Assembly: GCA_020891255.1 (NCBI GenBank)
Contig: BQFW01000012.1
Coordinates: 806,001 to 870,000 of the forward strand
Direction: 5' to 3'
Length of the DNA: 64,000 bases
DNA from: Entomortierella parvispora E1425
Taxonomy: Eukaryota; Fungi; Mortierellomycota
A model generated the notes under the pieces. That model worked only from the letters and a program-made list of their open reading frames with translations. It made no database searches and was not told where the DNA came from. Shown piece after piece: positions 7,017 to 53,004 of the stretch. The position numbers and the translations under genes are program-made. Position 1 is the stretch's first letter, and each line of letters starts with the position of its first letter.

Positions 7017-8181
7017 AGTCTTTCTCTCCTCTAGAGATCGTGTCAATTGCATTTAACTCTTGTAGACTATTTATTTTTGAATAAAGAATGTGCCCAAAAG
7101 CAATTCCACTCTTCACCAGGTTGTATAGAAAATGTGGAGTGACGCGTCTCTAACACTAATAGAATGTATATTGTTGTTGCGGTAAATTCTCTCTCCTTTT
7201 GCTAAAGAGAGGCAAAGTTGTATGGACCTTGCATCACAATGTGTAGTGATGATAGAGGTAGAGTGTTTCTTACCGAGCACTCTATCTCGATATCTCCAAG
7301 TCAGCAACCACCTCCTTGTAGCCACTGGCCACTGATCCCTGCATTTCGCCTCCACCATGCTCCATGATTGGCGAGAGTTAGTACTGCTCAAATCCATGAC
7401 CGATGATGGCTTTTCTCGCCATTATCCAACGCCAAAACGCGCCAAGGTGCGCCGATCCAGAGCAGCCACTGAAAGATCTGCTAGCAATTGGTCGTCTTAT
7501 CCGTCGACCTTGACATCTCGTATCCGCCGACTTTCTTGTCCCTCATCCGCCAACCACTCCGTTTCTTGACCACCGACACTTCCGTAACCGCCGAGTTGTG
7601 AAATTTTGGAGGGTTCAAACTTACCAAAAGGTGCGAAGTAAATTCTCTCTCCAAAACTTGTGAGAAGTAGATACTGTGGATCCTATACCAATGTGTCTAG
7701 CCATATCTACCTTGTAGCTTGGCCAACGGAGTCATTGAAACTTCTGCCGTGGGTGACCGGCTGCTCGAAAGGACAGCGGTCGGTGAGAAAGACACCGATC
7801 TAGATTTTTTTTTTGGTTGACATGAACAAAGTACTTTGGTTAGGTTGAGGACTAAGGAAGGGGTCGTCGGCAGATAAGATGAAGACAAGTCGGCGGATAC
7901 GGCAATGGTTAGGTCGGTGGATTAGTGAGCGGTCGGTGGACGAGAGACAAGAAGGTCGGTGGTTTGGGTCGGTGGTAATGGTCGGCGGATAGGACGCCCA
8001 AAAAGGGAAGTCCCCCATGGTCGGCGGAAAACTAACCCACGACTGAGTCGTTGGTTAGATTCTTCAGTTGGAAACTTATCAACGATATGGTCGTTGGATA
8101 GAGGCATCGCTACCTTCGTTCGTTCAAAGCACGCGACAAAAAAAAAACGGTTAAAAAAAAAAGTAGAAAAGGCAAAAGAAG

Positions 8182-43358: not shown

Positions 43359-43367
43359 ACAATCGCG
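43359..43367 (+). repeat. Left target-site duplication ACAATCGCG
   Basis: Identical to 49621-49629. Confidence 0.95.
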
Positions 43368-43920
43368 TAGTCTCGTCACCATCCCCTCCGCCGGTTCACA
43401 GGAGAGTCACAAGTGCTGACGCACCTGCCTTTTTAGGCAGCTCTCACTGAAAACCTCTAGAGGGGCTGGTCGGCAAGTAAGGTTTCCACTATGACCCTGC
43501 AGAGCTCTGTCAAAAAAATAACGGCAAAGTCGAAAAACAGCTCAGTTTTGCTCATCCTCCCTTCATCATTCACCTCATCTCGCACCATTAATCTATGGTC
43601 GCCTTGCCATTCCACTCCCATTCCCCTCCCATTCCCCTGTTTCCATCGCAATCTTCCACTCTCAGTGCGTTCTCGCTCTCTTGACGACCTTCATACAAAG
43701 CGCCTCCGCCGTTCCCCGTCTCTCAGGTTATTTGTTTTCGCTGAGAAAAGTGCTCCAGGTACGCCTTCATGGACACGAATATATGAACTAGCACGCTCTG
43801 GCCATGGAAACTAACAGCTATTCCCTCTTCTACACCAAAAGCCCAGTCCTCAATTGATCCCCCCGCTCTTCAATTGATCCCTCCGTCCTCATATCCCGTC
43901 CAATTGGTATCACGCTAGTA
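43368..43920 (+). repeat. Left terminal inverted repeat (553 bp)
   Basis: Reverse complement of 49068-49620. The ORF track shows mirrored identical ORFs (43491-43814 / 49174-49497), and coordinate sums are constant at 92988, so there are no indels. Confidence 0.97.
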
Positions 43921-43941
43921 AAGTTCGCGATTTTTTCGCGT

Positions 43942-46454
43942 TTGATGAAAAAAATCATTGTTCTAACGGCCGATATCAGTTCTCCCGTCCTGTTGACAGC
44001 CCCCCCCCCCCACGATAAAAAAATATGGTCACATCTCTTCATCGTCGCATTCCCCCGAAGCCAGTGGGTCAAACAACCAAAGGAGAGGCCTGTCTCTGAG
44101 GACCAAGGCAAAAATCTCGTTGCTATTCTAGAGTATATCAGAGATTGCGGGCTTTCGTTTGGTTCGTTCATTGAAGCCTGTCTCAATTCAGATGACATTG
44201 TGGTGAAAAGAAAAAGTTGATCACTTCCTCGCACATGGATGCCCCGCCCGTTGCTTCGATATCTGGAAGGACAGCATCAAGAAGGACCATTCTAAAACTC
44301 TATTGACTTCTGCCATGGATTTCGTGCTGAAGTTCGCACGGCCAGAAATCGAACGAGCCAGCCATACCATGAATATTGGGCTCCCTGCCACTGCAGTAAC
44401 CGGGGAAGCTCTGGAACAGTTCCGCCTCGAAAATATCCTGCGAGAAATGGAGGGGCATGCCCCCATATCCCTAGCCTTGCTGCGTGGTCTCATAAACGAC
44501 AAGAGGCTTTCACCTTTCGAACCAGAAATCCCCGCCGTCCCTGTAGTCGCCAGTGTCGTCCTCAGGACGTGGAATAGACGGGCAAATTTCCTCCAAGGTA
44601 TCTTCAGTCTCTACTTTTATAGCCAGGGTGCTACAAAGTCGTTGGTCAGTGTTCTCCAAAGAGCTGGACTCAGCAATAGCTTTGACTGGATTATGGAGGG
44701 CTTGGATCATCTGACCACGGCACATTTAGAAAAAATCCAGTCAATTTTGAAGGACAGGAAACAACCGTTCATGATTGTGTACGATAACATCAACATGGCA
44801 TTTCGGCGCTACAATCAGAGAACGACAAACAAAGATTCATTCGAAAATGGTGCCACAGCGACGGCAATTCTCACTTCTGAGATGCCTGCTGTTGAAGGGG
44901 TGCAAGATGCCACGAGGCATATACGTGCCTCCGATTTGTACCCCTCCAAAGAACAGGACAGTCATTTGAAGGAAACATACCGTTATCATCTGATTGAGGC
45001 GCTGCGAAGACGAGGAACCATATCTCTCAAAAACCCTATTCCTGAGCCAGTCAAGAACAAACTCAAAGTGGAGAGAACCAAAGCTTACCCACTTCCATCC
45101 ATGCACATTGACCAGTCAACCGTGGAAGGCAACAGGGATATTCTTGACAAGATCATGAAGGTGCTTCAGCTTTCGCCAGAGACTTTCTTTGATCAGACGC
45201 GTCTTGTTGTTGCAGGAGATCAACTCACCTTGGCCAGAATACGAAGTGTAGCAAGATTACGATGGGATGAGGACTTGGCGTACTACCGTGTGGAATGGGC
45301 AATCCCTGTCCTTCAACTTTTTCATCTTCAGATGGTTCTGGCATCAACAATTTTGAAGACGCACTGGGGCACTCGAACAACACCTGGATCGCTCAGCTCC
45401 TTCGTCGCGGCCTTGGAAAAAAAGCGGATCAGCCCAGACAAGTCTAGTTTCCATGATCTTGATGAATTTCTTCGCCATGTTTTTGATGCCATAGTCTTGC
45501 TCATTTGGGAAATCAAGCTCAAGAGTGAAGAGGAATTGTCCAGCAAGTCCTCCGGACAGATGCCTCACTCATCAATGGATGTCATGGATAAGGTTGACGG
45601 TATCATCGGCCAATATTTGACAGCAACAGGCCTTGGTGGCATGGCAAATCAGCAGTCAGTCAACGCCGCGTTGTTCATTCGGGACATGCTGTTCTACATT
45701 GAGCTGGGATCAGCGATCAAAGCAGGGGATATAGGGCGAATTCTGGAGATGATCCGATGGCTTACCTTGACCTTTCAAGCTGGAGGCAATAGAAACTACG
45801 CAAATGAGCTTCTACGACTTCACTGTGGCCTCTTTTATTCTTGGAAGACAGAGGATAGGAATACCATATTATCCTCGATGCTAGTTAATACTACTGGACA
45901 ACCAAACAGATGGATACCCACCGACCTTTATCAAGAGCACAACAATCTTCTTACAAAAATCAGACACGCGGCAAAAGTCCAGCAATCTGAACTGGGGTAT
46001 TTTAGAGAAAAAAATTGCGCCAAACGTTCGCACGTTCCAGGAGATTGCGAGGACGGTCGAGAAAATGTTCAAAACGCCTCATTGTGGAACCAACCACTCA
46101 GCTCCATCCTCTGTGGCGGACATCGATATAATTAAGCAGCGGTGCATCGAGGCTGGCTTTTTCACGCATGACGATATATCTCCTGATCTTGTGGTTCCTG
46201 CTGTGAGAGATCTTTTGGCAGAGGGACGCAATAATATTGTAGATAAGCGTCGAATTGCTGTTTTCAAGAAATGCTGTGGTCGCTATTGTAATGAAGACGC
46301 TGGTGAGATGGATGTCGAGATGGAGGAGGAGGAGGAAGATGCTGAGATGGACGAGGAACGCCCTACAATTGCTGATGATGAAGCACTAGAGTTTCCTGAA
46401 TTCGACATCTCACAATTCGACCTGGACGAGTTCGTTGAAAATAACTTTTGTTAA
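43942..46454 (+). CDS. Academ/DUF6589-type DDE transposase, broken by two +1 frameshifts (near 44211-44215 and 45973-45976)
   Basis: IVYDNINM, VAGDQLT, LFHLQM, GGNRNYANELL and WIPTDLYQEHNN motifs. Adjacent frames continue seamlessly across the breaks (VKRK-VDHFLAHG; AAK-SSNLNWGILEKKIAPNV). The true start is uncertain. Confidence 0.82.
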
Positions 46455-47035
46455 ATAAAGCAGCACCTCCCTGCAATGTACATCTAACCGCAGAGCCACA
46501 CGGCGCCCCTGCCGACAAGTATCTGTCCATTGGATTGGGACCACTCTGTGGTGTACTTCGGTTCTCATTTTTTTTCGAGGTCGGCGCACATTTTTGGAAC
46601 CGTGGTTCTAGTGATTTTTTTTTTCCGGAAATTTTTCTCGGTCCATTGCTTTGATCGTACGCAGCCTGAGCTGAAATACAGATCCCTCTCCTCTCTTTTG
46701 CTTCCAATCCTCCAAGGGATGTCACTGGTGTTGGTGACATTGTTTTCTCATACTACTCTTTGAGGTCTCTGTTTTCTTGTTTCGACCCTTCTCAGCCTCA
46801 ATAAATTGGTCCAGGGAAAAAATGAAGAAAAAAAATTGAGTGAGAGCAGTGAACCAGTTCGGCGCACTGGCTTTTTTTCTTTTGAGAGACGCAGTGCACC
46901 GGTTCTCTTTTTCGCCCAGTCCCAGTCCCCTTGCCCAACTGCAACGTTTGTGCAGGCTGCCGGTAGTATACCTCCACCTCCTCGACTTTCATGAGCGAGG
47001 TTTTTTTATTTCTATTTGAAGTGCTGTTATAGTTG

Positions 47036-49068
47036 TCACCGCTTCAGAGCAGAGGGGCCGAAATGTTGAATAATTGATATTGTAGGAGGCGTGGAAGTAT
47101 TGTCTTGAACTTGATTGCTTCTCTGTGGTGATGGCGGAAGAAAATATTGGATTACCTTGAGTTCCTTTTGTTTAGACGAAGGGTTGTTCTCTGTTGCTGT
47201 TCCTCCCTTTTTTCGTATCGCCTTCGTTTTTTTTGGAGGTGTTTTCGGGGGTTTAAGCAGCAATTGCGTGAGATTTTTGCTTTCCTTGACTTGTTGCGGT
47301 GGAAGGTTTTGATCAATCTGCCGCTGGCCATAGCCGTCCTGCAGCGAATGAATCTCCATTTCATCTTCACTTATTAGTTGGTCTGACTGTTGCTGGTCGC
47401 GACTGGCTGTGGAAACGACTTGCATTTCCTGCTGATCCGTTGTGGCACTGATCAAAGGAGGAATTTGAAAAGATGGGGCCATTCCAAATTGCCGCCGTCG
47501 CTCCTTTTCTTGGCGATTTTTTTTTCCTTCTCGTCCTTCTCCTCCAAGAATTGCTTGCCCAAACCCATGATGATCTCTAGCACCTGGCTTGGATATGTTT
47601 CATTCAGTGGGTCCCAGTATAGCATGTCGATTGATCTGGCAGCAATTATACTCTTGTACTTCTTGACGGTCTTGTTTAACATGTAGTCGGTCATGACCGT
47701 TTGTTCTGTGTCGTGCATGCGGCCCTTAAAGTGCAAGTCATACATATTATCCCTCCATACTATCAGCGCATTCCGGACTTGTTCCGCCTCATTCTTATCC
47801 CATTTCTCTCGTTTCGATGCCTTGTCTGCTGGCTGAATTGTTGACGACTCGTCCTTGTCATCAGCTTCATCCGGATTGCAGATATTGCAGCACACGTCCG
47901 TAACTGGGACGTGCTCGTTCCCGTAGTAATCGTTAAAATACTTTCGGATACATCCAGGAGAGTTCGCTAGGTCAATAAGGTCTTTAAGATCTTGCTGAAC
48001 GGGATCTTTTTTTTTGGGGGTAACTTTTGGTGCCGATTTTGGGACCAAAAATATACCGTATCCTTGGATTGTGCCGTCCCTTGCAGCTCGTCCAAATCGC
48101 TGAAAAAGACAATTTATATCCCGAGGGTAGCCATACTGGACAACACGAGCGATATCCCTAATGTCACATCCCATACCTGCGGCTTCCGTTGCTAGCAAAA
48201 TAGGATATTTGCCTTCACGGAACTCCTTCATGCGACGATTCTTGAGATCATCGGTTTTGAAACCATGATACACCCGAACTTGTTCTTGGCCGAACCAAGT
48301 GCGTAGAAGGTGTCCAGCTTGCTCTGCTAAATCCCGGTTGTCGAAATAAACGATGGTCTTGGCCTTGTCCTTCAAGAAAAGGAGATCTTTAAATGATGAT
48401 ACGGCCTCCTTAAATGAAGTGACCTTGTACATGATATTGGGTCGATCGTTACCGATGTTGATGATAGTCGGGTTCATCATGTCCAGTGATAGTATTGTAG
48501 TCTTCAAAATTGATCTGGGAAGTGTAGCCGAGGCAGCTATGAAAGGTGCTCGATTGTTTAGCCTGTAGCGCAACTTAGCAAGCTCCCCAAAAGCGTGGCG
48601 AAATGACGATCCCCAGGCGTGGATGCAATGGGCTTCATCAACAACAACAGCGCGTATGCTTTCAGCCCATTTGCTGTTTTCCCAAAGACCCTTTAATCGT
48701 TTGGATTCAAGAAGCATCTCTGGAGATAGAAAAATTGCCCGATATCCACCTTGGAGGACTTTGGAGGCGTTGATATCCTTATCATCCTCCGTGATACTGA
48801 CACATTCGATGTTGAGATTCTTGAGCTTGTCTCTTTGTTCGATGCCAAGAGCCTTAAGAGGTGTTATTACAAGGATGGCAGCGTCACTCCACAGAAATAG
48901 TGGAAGAGTGAAGGCCAGAGTTTTTCCCCAACCTGTGGGGGCAATTAAGACGCAATCTCTCCGATCAATAATGGATCGGAGAACGTCCAATTGCTCGGGC
49001 TTGGGGATGACGCCGAGTTTGTCTTCGCAGACACTTATGACGCGATCAGTATCAGACAAAGGAGGCAT
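47036..49068 (-). CDS. RecQ-like superfamily 2 helicase of the transposon (main ORF 49068-47452, probably extending to 47036 across a frameshift in the T9 run at 47517-47525)
   Basis: APTGWGKT (Walker A), VVDEAHC (DEAH), ASAT, ATEAAGMGCD and QRFGRAARDG motifs, plus a RecQ Zn-binding-like CIRKYFNDYY...CCNIC. Confidence 0.9.
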
Positions 49069-49620
49069 ACTAGCGTGATACCAATTGGACGGGATATGAG
49101 GACGGAGGGATCAATTGAAGAGCGGGGGGATCAATTGAGGACTGGGCTTTTGGTGTAGAAGAGGGAATAGCTGTTAGTTTCCATGGCCAGAGCGTGCTAG
49201 TTCATATATTCGTGTCCATGAAGGCGTACCTGGAGCACTTTTCTCAGCGAAAACAAATAACCTGAGAGACGGGGAACGGCGGAGGCGCTTTGTATGAAGG
49301 TCGTCAAGAGAGCGAGAACGCACTGAGAGTGGAAGATTGCGATGGAAACAGGGGAATGGGAGGGGAATGGGAGTGGAATGGCAAGGCGACCATAGATTAA
49401 TGGTGCGAGATGAGGTGAATGATGAAGGGAGGATGAGCAAAACTGAGCTGTTTTTCGACTTTGCCGTTATTTTTTTGACAGAGCTCTGCAGGGTCATAGT
49501 GGAAACCTTACTTGCCGACCAGCCCCTCTAGAGGTTTTCAGTGAGAGCTGCCTAAAAAGGCAGGTGCGTCAGCACTTGTGACTCTCCTGTGAACCGGCGG
49601 AGGGGATGGTGACGAGACTA
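49068..49620 (-). repeat. Right terminal inverted repeat (553 bp)
   Basis: Reverse complement of 43368-43920. Confidence 0.97.
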
Positions 49621-49629
49621 ACAATCGCG
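49621..49629 (+). repeat. Right target-site duplication ACAATCGCG
   Basis: Identical to 43359-43367. Confidence 0.95.
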
Positions 49630-50130: not shown

Positions 50131-53004
50131 ATGGAAGAGGTATGGTATGGCATGGCATGTCTCGCAGTAGGCTAATTGAGATATGTGGATACTAATGATA
50201 TCGACACACTTTTGTCTTCCTGTTAGACCTATGTGGCCCCACAGGATTGCCCTGTCACCCCATCAGTCGTTGAAGACCCTGCATTTGAAGTCTGCTTCTT
50301 CTCAGATAAATCCTCGGACTCCAGCGACAATGAGGATGAGGATATCCAGGAGGCTGCTCAGGATGTCGAATACCCGGCCTCAGTGTCTTCATCGGAAGTT
50401 ACTGAGAACTTGGAGATACCCGTCGAACCCCCGAACGACCAGGAAGCTCCTGTTCCTTTGTGGACCAAGGTTTTCGGGGGCCTCCTTCCGCGGCATCCTA
50501 ATCACAACCGACTAATCGAAAAGCGCATGGACAAATCGATGGTCATTCCCTGGCTGTTTGAACAGGGGCGTCTTGCTTCAACCAAATACCTGAAGAAGGA
50601 GGAGAGGAAGTCGAAGAGTACGAAGTCCTCCCTCGAATGCTCCGTCAGATACTTCTGCCAGCACGCTGGTACCCCTAAGAAGCGCCGGCGACAGGGCAGC
50701 TCGGCTACCAAGGTTAAAGCAGAAGACGACAACTCTAGTACAGACAGCGACTGCAGCCTTAAAGAGGACCCCACCCAAGATGATTTTCCAGAGAATGTAC
50801 TCAAGAAGCGTCCGCGTCAAAAGATCAGTGGCAAGGTTGGCTGTAAGTCATACGTTCTCGTCAAGTATTACAAGAACTCAGAAGAGGCCGTTGTTACATA
50901 CAGACCGTACCATACAGGGCACCAAACGAATTCCATCGAGAATATCAGGCATTGTCGCCTGTCCAAATGGCGAAGGGAACAGGTTGAGAGGATGCTCGAT
51001 GCAGGACACTCTCGTCGGTTCATCTATGAAAAGCTTTCGAAAGCGCCGCCGGAGGACAAGTCGCAATTCGATATTCAGTGTGCTAGAGATAGGGCCATCA
51101 CGAAGGAAGACATCTATAATATAGACATTCGTCGCCAACGGATTACTTCTCAGCTTGACCAAGATGAGAGAATATCTATGCGTCTGTGGGGAACGAAATT
51201 GCGAGAACAGGGGTTCTCCGTGTTTGAATACGATGAGGCACCTGATGGTGCTTGGTCTTCTTCCAGCAGTTTTGGGGGAAAGGATATCTTGGTGGATAAT
51301 GGTCGAATGAAACGAGACGCTCCTCGGAAACCTGCCCGTGGTAAGAATCCCACTCCTACATCAGACAGAGTGGCTTTTGCACTCATTGAGAAAATGGCTG
51401 TCGGCCTAAATCTCGAGCAGGGTCGATTGGCTGCTTTTATTGAATCCGTTGCACCCGATAAACAGCCAATTGAACCGCCAACTGCCAAGACTGGTCCCAA
51501 GGAACGGTTTGGATTTGGATTTATATCCCCTTGGCAGCGGAAGATGCTGCAACAATTCGGCGCTGGCTTTAGCATTGATGCCACCCATGGAACAACCCGT
51601 CATGACAACACGCAACTTTACACAATTGTGGTTGCGCACTCCTCTGGAAAAGGAATACCAGTAGCTTTTTTTCTTACGAGTGATATGTCAGCTTCGGCTC
51701 TTAGCCTTTGGCTGAGTCATGTGCGGTGCCAACTCATGGTTCAAGAAGGGTCAAACAAGCCGTATTGCATTGTGAAAACAATTGTGGTTGACGACAGCTA
51801 CATCGAGAAGAATGCCATCAACTATGCCTTCGATGATGTCAAGATTCAGCTCTGCCTCTGGCACGTTCAGCGCGCATGGGCTCGAGCTCTCCCTGGCAAG
51901 ATCCATCCAGATATGACCGGCAAGAACAAAGACGAGAAGGCACAACTAAAGCGTCAGTATGACAAATCCCGCGAGGTGATCTTCAAGATGTTGCGCCGTA
52001 TGATGTACACTCAAGATCCCGACCAGGCCTCTCTACTCCAGCAAAGCCTTCGCCAGGCTCTAACGCTAGACAGTGCTTACACGGAAGTCCTCGAATACCT
52101 TGACACTACCAGCTTTACTCTGGAGAAGCGAGAACAGTGGATGCGCGCATACCGGAGTGATGTATATTGGGCCGACATCAACACCAACAACTATGTGGAG
52201 AGCTGGCACAGTCAACTGAAATCGAAGTTCCTGCGAGACAACAAGAGTCCCCGGCTTGACACTGTGATCAATGTACTCTCTGGTGCTGTCGTCGAATACT
52301 TCCAGAGTATTATCAACACAGCTACGTTGAACCTCGGACGGCAATCAAAAAATACAAAAGAATATCAGGATCGATTGATTTCTGTGCAGCGTCGTTTCAG
52401 GAACTTGACCGCTCAACAAAGGCTCCAGCTCTTCCGACATGACACCCTTTCGAACCGTCTCTGGATTACCTCGTTTGATAAGTCTGATGGGAGTGAGTAC
52501 GAGATCACTGCAATTCATACGACATATCCACCCACAATTCGGGCCTGTGAGTGCCCTGACTTCAAGCGCCGTCTTCAGCCTTGCAAACATATCATTGCTG
52601 CTACCCTCATGTTTCCAAACATTCAACTACCAGTTGACAACAACTTTCATGGGTCCATGACAACTATTGTGCTTCCAGAGTCAAAGGACACTAAGGACAA
52701 GCTATTGGCTGGCATTGAGCCTGGAGAAGAAACGGCTGCTGTCGTTTTGGGAGGGATAGAATCAATAGTAACAGGGGACGACGAAGATGAAGAACGGAGG
52801 CATCTGCAACGAGAGGCCGCGAAGTGGAGGCTTAAAGCTCTAGAGCAGATCAACATCCTATCTAGCCTCGTGCAAAGCAAAGATGACAAGGAGATGGAGG
52901 ACATCACCTCCATTTTGCAACAGACAACGTTGTGTATTGGTCAGATGGTTAATAGAGCTCCTCTACACTTCAATGCCGTACACAAACGTAGACAAGTCTT
53001 CTAA
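50131..53004 (+). CDS. Mutator (MULE) DDE transposase-like protein with a C-terminal SWIM zinc finger; exon 1 50131-50139, intron 50140-50226
   Basis: FSIDATHG (D), IVVDDSYIE (D), LCLWHVQRAW, TNNYVESWHSQLK (E) and SWIM CECPDF..RLQPCKHI. ATG GAA GAG|gtatgg...ttag|ACC TAT GTG splices in frame. Confidence 0.9.

What the first reader, a model, noticed from the sequence alone, without database searches (positions are those of the whole stretch)
43359..49629. Complete, apparently very recent helicase-encoding DNA transposon (AcademH architecture)
Seen: a 6253-bp unit bounded by 553-bp TIRs (5'-TAG...CTA-3') with no mismatch in the parts compared by eye, and an exact 9-bp TSD ACAATCGCG. It encodes a DDE-type transposase (+) and a RecQ-like DEAH helicase with a Zn-binding module (-) in convergent orientation. 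Established: Academ elements have TAG termini, and the AcademH lineage pairs a transposase with an SF2 helicase and makes 9-10-bp TSDs. Their transposition mechanism and the role of the helicase are experimentally uncharacterised as far as I know. Inference: identical TIRs and an intact TSD indicate a young, possibly active copy. This makes it a tractable model of a helicase-assisted cut-and-paste system in an early-diverging fungus. It may already match a catalogued family.
Basis: partly seen in the sequence, partly recalled or inferred. Interest (0 to 1): 0.85.

Follow-up and report, generated by a model that had tools for sequence, protein, structure and literature searches.

The report
Young helicase-carrying fungal DNA transposon
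This is a very young, apparently intact "cut-and-paste" DNA transposon of the soil fungus Entomortierella parvispora that carries a transposase and its own RecQ-like helicase. It is present in seven near-identical copies and absent from the same site in a related isolate, which makes it a good candidate for studying what the helicase does, though it belongs to a kind already described (AcademH).

Summary
There is a 6253-bp unit (43368-49620) with perfect 553-bp terminal inverted repeats (TIRs), TAG...CTA ends and an exact 9-bp target-site duplication (TSD), ACAATCGCG. The genome is Entomortierella parvispora (GCA_020891255.1).

- **Copies:** the assembly holds seven full-length copies at different sites. 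Six differ from each other only by single-base homopolymer indels. Six have perfect, different 9-bp TSDs.
- **Copy number and empty site:** short-read contigs of the same sample give 7.0x depth. A related isolate carries the exact empty site with one ACAATCGCG.
- **Intactness:** as assembled, the window copy is not intact. It has three frameshifts in the transposase and one in the helicase. The short-read contigs read all four in frame, so these are assembly errors. The real genes encode 808 aa (Pfam DUF6589, modelled as an RNase H-like DDE fold, D253/D398/E637) and 677 aa (RecQ-like, DEAH, Cys4).
- **Expression:** a second run of the same sample behaves like RNA. It suggests both genes are expressed, and that the helicase mRNA starts in the TIR and has an 83-nt 5'UTR intron.
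- **Conservation:** the same architecture, termini and outer TIR occur in Mortierella claussenii (dN/dS about 0.17-0.18).

The features fit AcademH. Direct comparison with Repbase Academ sequences was not possible. Verdict: a new, probably active member of a known kind.

The parts
43359..43367 (.). Left copy of the 9-bp target-site duplication, ACAATCGCG
   Evidence: Read directly. A related isolate (run X5) has a single copy at the empty site.
43368..43920 (+). Left terminal inverted repeat, 553 bp, starting 5'-TAG
   Evidence: 100% complementary to 49068-49620. Read depth is 14-17x the single-copy flank. Short-read contigs give C7 rather than C6 at 43858.
43368..43570 (.). Outer ~200 nt of the TIR, conserved across species. 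It is the probable transposase-binding and promoter region and includes a short palindrome, CTGCC-N6-GGCAG, at 43425-43440
   Evidence: About 78% identical to the Mortierella claussenii element (first 27 nt identical), against 34% for the inner TIR and dS about 1 in the genes.
43759..43841 (+). 83-nt GT..AG intron-like segment inside the TIR, with an ACTAAC branch-point motif (left-arm coordinates)
   Evidence: Skipped in a contig of run X2 that continues into the helicase gene. Not skipped in DNA run X1. Sequence read.
44025..46454 (+). Transposase gene: 808 aa once three one-base assembly errors (44052, 44211, 45973) are removed. DUF6589 family, DDE residues D253, D398, E637
   Evidence: Copy L002:6713-9136 carries the uninterrupted ORF.
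46455..47035 (.). Spacer between the convergent genes, holding both 3' UTRs
   Evidence: Run X2 contigs end at 46739 (+ gene) and start at 46971 (- gene). Short pieces within 46685-46929 also match repeated DNA in the other isolate.
47036..49068 (-). RecQ-like SF2 helicase gene: 677 aa once the one-base assembly error at 47516 is corrected. No intron in the coding region. The A of its ATG is the innermost TIR base
49068..49620 (-). Right terminal inverted repeat, ending CTA-3'. Carries the helicase 5' leader and the 83-nt intron (49147-49229 on the - strand)
49621..49629 (.). Right copy of the 9-bp target-site duplication, ACAATCGCG
   Evidence: Read directly.

Best explanation
The locus is one of seven essentially identical copies of an autonomous TIR DNA transposon of Entomortierella parvispora, of the type that pairs a DUF6589 DDE transposase with a separately encoded RecQ-like helicase. 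That type is the AcademH lineage of the Academ superfamily. Shown here: the element inserted at ACAATCGCG and duplicated those 9 bp. It amplified so recently that the copies carry no substitutions. Both genes are intact in the reads. Inferred mechanism: (1) each TIR serves as promoter and 5' leader, with an 83-nt intron, for the gene next to it, so both genes are transcribed inward; (2) the transposase binds the conserved outer ~200 nt of the TIRs; (3) its RNase H-like active site (D253, D398, E637) cuts at the TAG/CTA ends and joins the 3' ends to target phosphates 9 bp apart; (4) gap repair then creates the 9-bp TSD. The helicase has intact Walker A, DEAH, SAT and QxxGRxxR motifs and a Cys4 zinc module. 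It most likely acts as an ATP-driven 3'-5' DNA-unwinding accessory factor during end processing, transpososome assembly or disassembly, or repair of the donor or target. Its exact step is unknown.
For: - **Boundaries:** TIR and TSD are exact.
- **Copies:** there are seven full-length copies at unrelated sites. Six differ only by homopolymer indels and the seventh by 4 substitutions. Six have perfect, different 9-bp TSDs.
- **Copy number:** read depth is 543.9 over the element against 78 over the flank, which is 7.0x.
- **Empty site:** a contig of isolate X5 runs through the left flank to 43367 and continues with the sequence that follows 49629, so it holds one ACAATCGCG.
- **Intact ORFs:** the same-sample contig removes all four frameshifts, giving 808-aa and 677-aa ORFs. 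Copy L002 holds the 808-aa ORF unchanged. The M. claussenii orthologues read through the same frames.
- **Helicase:** WRN, RecQ and BLM at E about 1e-34 by sequence and 1e-24 to 1e-26 by fold.
- **Conservation:** M. claussenii has the same convergent gene pair, the same terminus and a conserved outer TIR. dN/dS is 0.17 for the transposase and 0.18 for the helicase. A DUF6589-helicase neighbour pair also exists in the basidiomycete Peniophora.
- **Literature:** AcademH makes 9-10-bp TSDs and AcademX 3-4-bp TSDs (PMC10045372). Academ domains have been reported in Mortierella (PMC5751038).
- **Expression:** in run X2 the depth is 2 over the flank, 11 over the transposase and 66 over the helicase, and there is a GT..AG skip.
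Against:
- Run X2 is labelled only 'DNA?'. Its RNA nature is inferred, and no run was listed in a search for RNA.
- Logan contigs drop rare variants, so some of the seven copies could still carry real defects.
- One copy (L003) shows only a 7-bp flank match.
- Activity itself (excision, new insertions) has not been observed.
- The role of the helicase is pure inference.
Confidence: 0.82

Rival explanations
1. It is a member of another helicase-bearing DNA transposon group, such as KolobokH, rather than Academ.
For: KolobokH elements of fungi also encode a RecQ helicase, and one red-algal Kolobok encodes it on the complementary strand (PMC9587614). The nearest solved folds are hAT and P, which are in the group that includes Kolobok.
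Against: In KolobokH the helicase lies downstream of the transposase domain. Here it is a separate convergent gene. No conserved C/DxxH motif lies between D398 and E637: the conserved histidines H433 and H446 have Q/G or L at position -3. TSDs are 9 bp and of varied sequence. From memory, Kolobok duplicates TTAA. The AcademH TSD length of 9-10 bp matches.
Confidence: 0.05
2. The window copy, and perhaps most copies, are dead: the frameshifts seen in the assembly are real, and only one master copy or none is autonomous.
For: In the assembly, six of seven copies carry the extra A at 45973, and the annotated gene models had to invent introns around it.
Against: A single 5.1-kb contig at 7x depth from the same sample reads all of these sites in frame. 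The contigs of a second run do the same for the four sites they cover. Differences between copies are almost only homopolymer length changes with no substitutions, which is the signature of long-read assembly error. The orthologues support the corrected frames.
Confidence: 0.07
3. The frameshifts are programmed (ribosomal or transcriptional slippage on A runs), as in some bacterial IS transposases.
For: Two of the three transposase shifts lie in A runs.
Against: The DNA-read contig itself has the in-frame lengths. The A runs are only 4-5 long. One shift lies in a C run. Copies differ from each other at these sites.
Confidence: 0.01
4. It is a host gene pair or segmental duplication flanked by chance repeats, not a mobile element.
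For: None beyond the 'hypothetical protein' annotation.
Against: There are seven copies with identical ends at unrelated sites, each with its own 9-bp duplication. A precise empty site exists in another isolate. The element is absent from other runs with the same species label.
Confidence: 0.01

Closest known systems
AcademH lineage of the Academ superfamily (Kojima 2020, Mob DNA 11:15; cited in PMC10045372 and PMC10799480)
   Same: A DDE transposase plus a separately encoded SF2/RecQ-like helicase, TIRs and 9-bp TSDs. It occurs in fungi including Mucoromycota, at low copy number.
   Different: This is a specific family of E. parvispora with long (553-bp) TIRs that carry the 5' leader and an intron. 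Whether this family is already in Repbase is unknown. Sequence-level membership was not tested.
AcademX (Academ elements with an XPG nuclease)
   Same: Presumed to have the same transposase family.
   Different: AcademX makes 3-4-bp TSDs and carries a nuclease rather than a helicase (PMC10045372). Here the TSD is 9 bp and no XPG domain is found.
KolobokH
   Same: A fungal TIR transposon that carries a RecQ-type helicase (PMC9587614).
   Different: [quoted passage not shown] Neither is found here, and the TSDs differ.
hAT (Hermes) and P element transposases
   Different: There is no detectable sequence similarity. Those families make 8-bp TSDs and have no helicase partner. The DUF6589 proteins lack the C/DxxH motif.
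The other E. parvispora helicase/transposase element, noted earlier in this scan (s1-176290)
   Same: Same genome, same gene pair, and TIRs used as transcription units.
   Different: That element is reported to encode shared N-terminal exons in 1-kb TIRs. Here the ORF in the TIR ends at a TAG just inside the TIR and is not in frame with either gene. Only the 5' UTR and intron are shared.

Membership tests
Academ superfamily / AcademH lineage | Transposase homologous to Repbase Academ transposases | not testable with these tools
   Repbase and Dfam are not available, and Kojima 2020 and Yuan & Wessler 2011 are not held. Indirect support: the protein is DUF6589. That family has about 7,500 cluster representatives. 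By accession (from memory), it has structural relatives in fungi, probably including rusts, and in animals. This matches the reported range of Academ.
Academ superfamily / AcademH lineage | A helicase (SF2, RecQ-like) encoded in addition to the transposase | tested here: met
   A 677-aa RecQ-like ORF on the opposite strand. It is conserved with the transposase in M. claussenii and is a neighbour of DUF6589 in Peniophora.
Academ superfamily / AcademH lineage | Target-site duplications of 9 or 10 bp (PMC10045372) | tested here: met
   Six of seven copies have perfect 9-bp TSDs. The seventh shows CACAATCTT on one side and CAATCTT on the other, which is compatible with loss of one CA unit.
   The TAG...CTA termini are present here and in M. 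claussenii. I could not confirm from the literature that this is a defining feature.
RNase H-like DDE transposases | RNase H-like fold with three conserved acidic residues in the canonical positions | tested here: met
   The AF2 model has pLDDT 86.5. D253 lies on the first strand, D398 follows strand 393-397, and E637 lies on a helix. All three are conserved. The top structural matches are all DDE transposases.
Kolobok / KolobokH | [quoted passage not shown] | tested here: not met
   No conserved C/DxxH appears in the alignments A1 and A2. The conserved H433 and H446 are not preceded by C or D at position -3.
Kolobok / KolobokH | [quoted passage not shown] | tested here: not met
   The helicase is a separate gene on the opposite strand.
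RecQ helicase family | SF2 motifs I, II (DEAH), III and VI, plus a Cys4 zinc-binding subdomain | tested here: met
   The motifs GWGKT, DEAH, SAT and QRFGRAARDG and the cysteines C373, C393, C394 and C397 are conserved. The match to E. coli RecQ 1oyw covers residues 23-385 at E 5e-34. Fold matches to BLM, RecQ and WRN are at E 1e-24 or better. Pfam found no HRDC or RQC domain.

The most novel reading that the evidence does not exclude
The long identical TIRs are not only transposase-binding ends. They may be a duplicated expression module (promoter, leader and spliced 5' UTR intron) that drives transposase and helicase inward from the two ends. On this reading, transposition competence and expression of both genes are physically coupled. 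The helicase would then be an obligatory factor that opens or resolves these long, snap-back-prone ends during transposition. This would be a helicase-dependent variant of DDE transposition that has never been shown biochemically.
Probability: 0.25. Interest if true: 0.65.

Novelty: new member of a known kind. Interest (0 to 1): 0.5.

Why it matters
As far as I know, no Academ or AcademH element has been shown to move, and the role of the transposon-encoded RecQ-like helicase is unknown. This family offers what an experiment needs:

- seven identical copies;
- intact 808-aa and 677-aa genes;
- exact ends and TSDs;
- a natural empty site in a related isolate;
- signs of expression;
- a culturable host.

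It also gives a practical warning. In GCA_020891255.1, homopolymer errors have broken these genes. The annotation pipeline then invented introns, one of which removes the catalytic glutamate region. The deposited protein models of this family are therefore wrong.

Tried and rejected
- **Programmed frameshifting:** rejected as an explanation for the split transposase. The DNA-read contig is in frame.
- **Shared coding exons in the TIRs** (as in scan note s1-176290): tested and rejected. After splicing and correction, the TIR ORF stops at a TAG at the inner TIR edge and is out of frame with the helicase ATG. It is separated from the transposase ATG by stops. The M. claussenii TIR does not preserve that frame.
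- **Papers not held:** Kojima 2020 and Yuan & Wessler 2011. Full-text searches for DUF6589 and PF20231 gave nothing linking it to Academ, and neither did the supplement of PMC10799480. A search for 'Academ' plus 'XPG' was swamped by the word 'academic'.
- **Profile search for Puccinia or animal homologues with names:** it returned only Mortierellaceae and agarics.
- **Lobosporangium locus L010:** it has an 80% inverted repeat with TAG/CTA ends but no matching TSD, so it was not used.
- **Sequence search of the PDB with the transposase profile:** no hits.
- **Rfam:** only a sub-threshold snoRNA match inside the transposase ORF, taken as chance.
- **Bacterial promoter and terminator scan:** not informative for a fungus.
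- **RNA runs:** none was listed.
- **Target-site consensus:** seven sites are too few. Only a loose A/T-rich centre is seen.
Full report
**1. What is in the sequence**

The window holds an inverted repeat with arms 43368-43920 and 49068-49620, 553 nt long and 100% complementary. The arms begin 5'-TAGTCTCG and end CGAGACTA-3'. They are flanked on both sides by ACAATCGCG (43359-43367 and 49621-49629). Between the arms lie two convergent coding regions. One is a DUF6589 protein on the + strand. The other is a DEAD/Helicase_C protein with a weak RecQ zinc-binding match on the - strand.

**2. Organism and copies**

The closest proteins are hypothetical proteins of Entomortierella parvispora (Mortierellomycota). 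At least seven paralogous gene models exist.

I fetched the loci around them from GCA_020891255.1 and found seven full-length copies. One of them, L004, is the window itself.

- Six copies show no substitution against each other over 6.25 kb and differ only by one-base changes in homopolymer runs.
- The seventh copy (L007) has four substitutions.
- Each copy sits in different flanking DNA.
- Six copies have a perfect 9-bp TSD, each of a different sequence.
- In L003 the flanks read CACAATCTT and CAATCTT. This fits a 9-bp TSD that lost one CA unit.

**3. Read evidence**

*Run X1.* Contigs of accurate reads from the same sample cover the single-copy flank at depth 78, the element body at 543.9 (7.0x) and the TIRs at about 1100-1320 (14-17x). 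The assembly's count of seven copies is therefore right, and there is perhaps one extra TIR fragment. One 5.1-kb contig (43984-48999) at 7x depth matches the window apart from eight single-base homopolymer changes.

*Run X5.* This run has the same species label, and its flank is roughly 93-96% identical to the window. Its contig follows the left flank to 43367 and then continues with the sequence that in the window follows 49629. This is the empty site with a single ACAATCGCG. X5 and X7 lack the element body, and nine runs with the same species label hold none of its sampled words. The insertion and its TSD are therefore real, and the family is specific to this lineage.

**4. Are the genes intact?**

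As assembled, they are not. Compared with full-length relatives (P0050, and P0003 of Mortierella claussenii), the window's transposase is broken by extra bases at 44052 (C5), 44211 (A5) and 45973 (A4). The helicase ORF stops early because of a T8 run at 47516.

The annotators' gene models bypass these breaks with artificial introns. One of them removes the region around the catalytic glutamate.

The X1 contig reads one base fewer at 44052, 44211 and 45973 and one more at 47516. The X2 contigs agree at every one of these sites. Applying the eight changes gives uninterrupted ORFs of 808 aa and 677 aa. Copy L002 already carries the 808-aa ORF unchanged. The M. claussenii orthologues read through the same frames.

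The pattern of only homopolymer indels, differing from copy to copy, with no substitutions, is what long-read assembly error produces. I conclude the frameshifts are artefacts, and I reject programmed frameshifting.

**5. The transposase**

- The full protein matches DUF6589 at E 5.8e-100.
- In a 10-sequence alignment reaching basidiomycetes, D253 (VYDN), D398 (AGDQL) and E637 (YQEH) are invariant. In 65 sequences E637 is invariant and both aspartates are at 90% or more.
- An exhaustive profile search finds 7,471 cluster representatives at E up to 1e-3.
- No solved structure matches by sequence.
- An AlphaFold2 model from the 65-sequence alignment is confident (pLDDT 86.5, pTM 0.84). It places D253 on the first strand, D398 directly after strand 393-397 and E637 on helix 632-649. 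A large helical insertion lies between the last core strand and that helix.

**6. The helicase**

Motifs I (GWGKT), II (DEAH), III (SAT) and VI (QRFGRAARDG) and four conserved cysteines are present. The best matches are WRN, E. coli RecQ and BLM, at E about 5e-35 to 1e-32 by sequence and 1e-24 to 1e-26 by fold. The C-terminal 150 residues added by the correction are low-complexity and lysine-rich.

**7. Conservation of the unit**

An M. claussenii contig carries the same arrangement:

- an 803-aa transposase on +;
- a 664-aa helicase ORF on -;
- a TIR of at least 615 bp ending ...ACGAGACTA;
- the start of a second copy downstream.

The transposases are 72% identical. The helicases are 63% identical over their full length, and 69% over the core aligned. 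dN/dS is 0.17 and 0.18, with dS about 1.0-1.4. Both genes are therefore kept by selection within the element lineage.

The outer ~200 nt of the TIR are about 78% identical, and the first 27 nt are identical. The inner TIR is essentially unalignable. This marks the outer part as the functional cis region. A DUF6589 gene next to a helicase gene is also found in the basidiomycete Peniophora, there in divergent orientation.

**8. Expression (inferred)**

Run X2 comes from the same sample but does not behave like DNA. Its depth is about 2 over the flank, 11 over the transposase and 66 over the helicase plus TIR. One contig runs from 46971 through the helicase gene into the TIR and skips 83 nt. The skipped segment has GT..AG ends in the sense of the helicase and contains an ACTAAC branch-point motif. 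X1 shows no such skip.

I read X2 as cDNA. On that reading both genes are transcribed, the helicase more strongly. The helicase mRNA starts in the right TIR and has a spliced 5' UTR intron (49147-49229, - strand), with no intron in the coding region.

Because the TIRs are identical, the left TIR probably serves the transposase in the same way. Continuity into the transposase was not seen, because the contig breaks at a C9-10 run.

I tested that idea here. The ORF in the TIR ends at the inner TIR edge and is not in frame with either gene.

**9. Mechanism**

Shown:
- insertion with a 9-bp duplication;
- recent amplification to seven copies;
- intact genes under purifying selection;
- a constrained outer TIR.

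Inferred:
- The transposase binds the outer TIR.
- It cleaves at the TAG/CTA ends with its DDE site.
- It integrates with a 9-bp stagger.
- The RecQ-like helicase supplies 3'-5' unwinding at some step. Candidates are opening of the long ends or of the target, transpososome remodelling, or donor and target gap repair. I cannot choose between these.

**10. Comparison with known systems**

The literature that is held states that AcademH elements encode a helicase and make 9-10-bp TSDs, whereas AcademX makes 3-4-bp TSDs (PMC10045372). It also states that AcademH occurs at low copy number in Basidiomycota, Ascomycota and Mucoromycota (PMC10799480). Academ-type RNase H domains have been detected in Mortierella genomes (PMC5751038). 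All tested features fit.

The only other helicase-bearing TIR group, KolobokH, differs in gene arrangement and in the C/DxxH signature (PMC9587614). Neither is met here.

I could not compare the protein with Repbase Academ sequences, so membership is very likely but not proven.

**11. Verdict**

The thing is a new, very young and probably active family member of a known kind. Its value is practical, as a clean model for a mechanistically unstudied superfamily, rather than conceptual.

Noticed in passing
window 44052, 44211, 45973, 47516 (also 43858, 43948, 43999, 44017, 46904, 47000): The assembly GCA_020891255.1 carries single-base homopolymer errors in this repeat family. The deposited gene models (EMPS_07650, EMPS_11578, EMPS_04059, EMPS_08327, EMPS_01867 and others) compensate with artificial introns or truncated starts, one of which removes the region around the catalytic glutamate. 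Similar errors may affect other genes of this assembly.
   Followed up: yes
window 50233-53004 (+): The next gene downstream of the element is a 923-aa MULE/SWIM-type transposase-like protein (MULE E 4e-9, ZSWIM1-3 RNaseH-like, SWIM). It is either another transposon or a domesticated copy. I did not look for its ends.
   Followed up: partly
window 43446-43765 (TIR): The same-sample DNA contigs contain a single-copy form of the TIR that lacks 318 bp (joint 43446>43765, depth 84). The outermost 67 bp of the TIR have about 1-1.5 more copies than expected. This suggests one extra, internally deleted end or a non-autonomous derivative elsewhere in the genome.
   Followed up: no
window 46685-46929: Short pieces (55-75 nt) of the spacer between the two genes match moderately repeated DNA in the related isolate that lacks the element (depth about 3x of its flank). 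The same region has extra depth in the home strain. It could be a captured fragment or a common low-complexity motif.
   Followed up: no
L008 about 8018-8026 and L008 5491-5499: The M. claussenii contig shows a second TAGTCTCGT terminus about 2.5 kb after the end of the first element, so copies lie close together there.
   Followed up: no
E. parvispora protein P0182 (EMPS_02080), same contig as L002 and L006: A second, divergent DUF6589 family (34% identity) exists in the same genome. Earlier scan notes (s1-193887, s1-176290) describe further helicase/DUF6589 elements, so this genome hosts several lineages of the group.
   Followed up: no
L009 11171-14138: In Peniophora, the DUF6589-helicase pair lies about 5 kb from a KDZ-type transposase gene (PF18758), in a transposon-rich neighbourhood.
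   Followed up: no
window 45744-45812 (+): A sub-threshold Rfam match to SNORD57 (27.7 bits against a gathering score of 47, E 0.016) lies inside the transposase ORF. I take it as chance.
   Followed up: no
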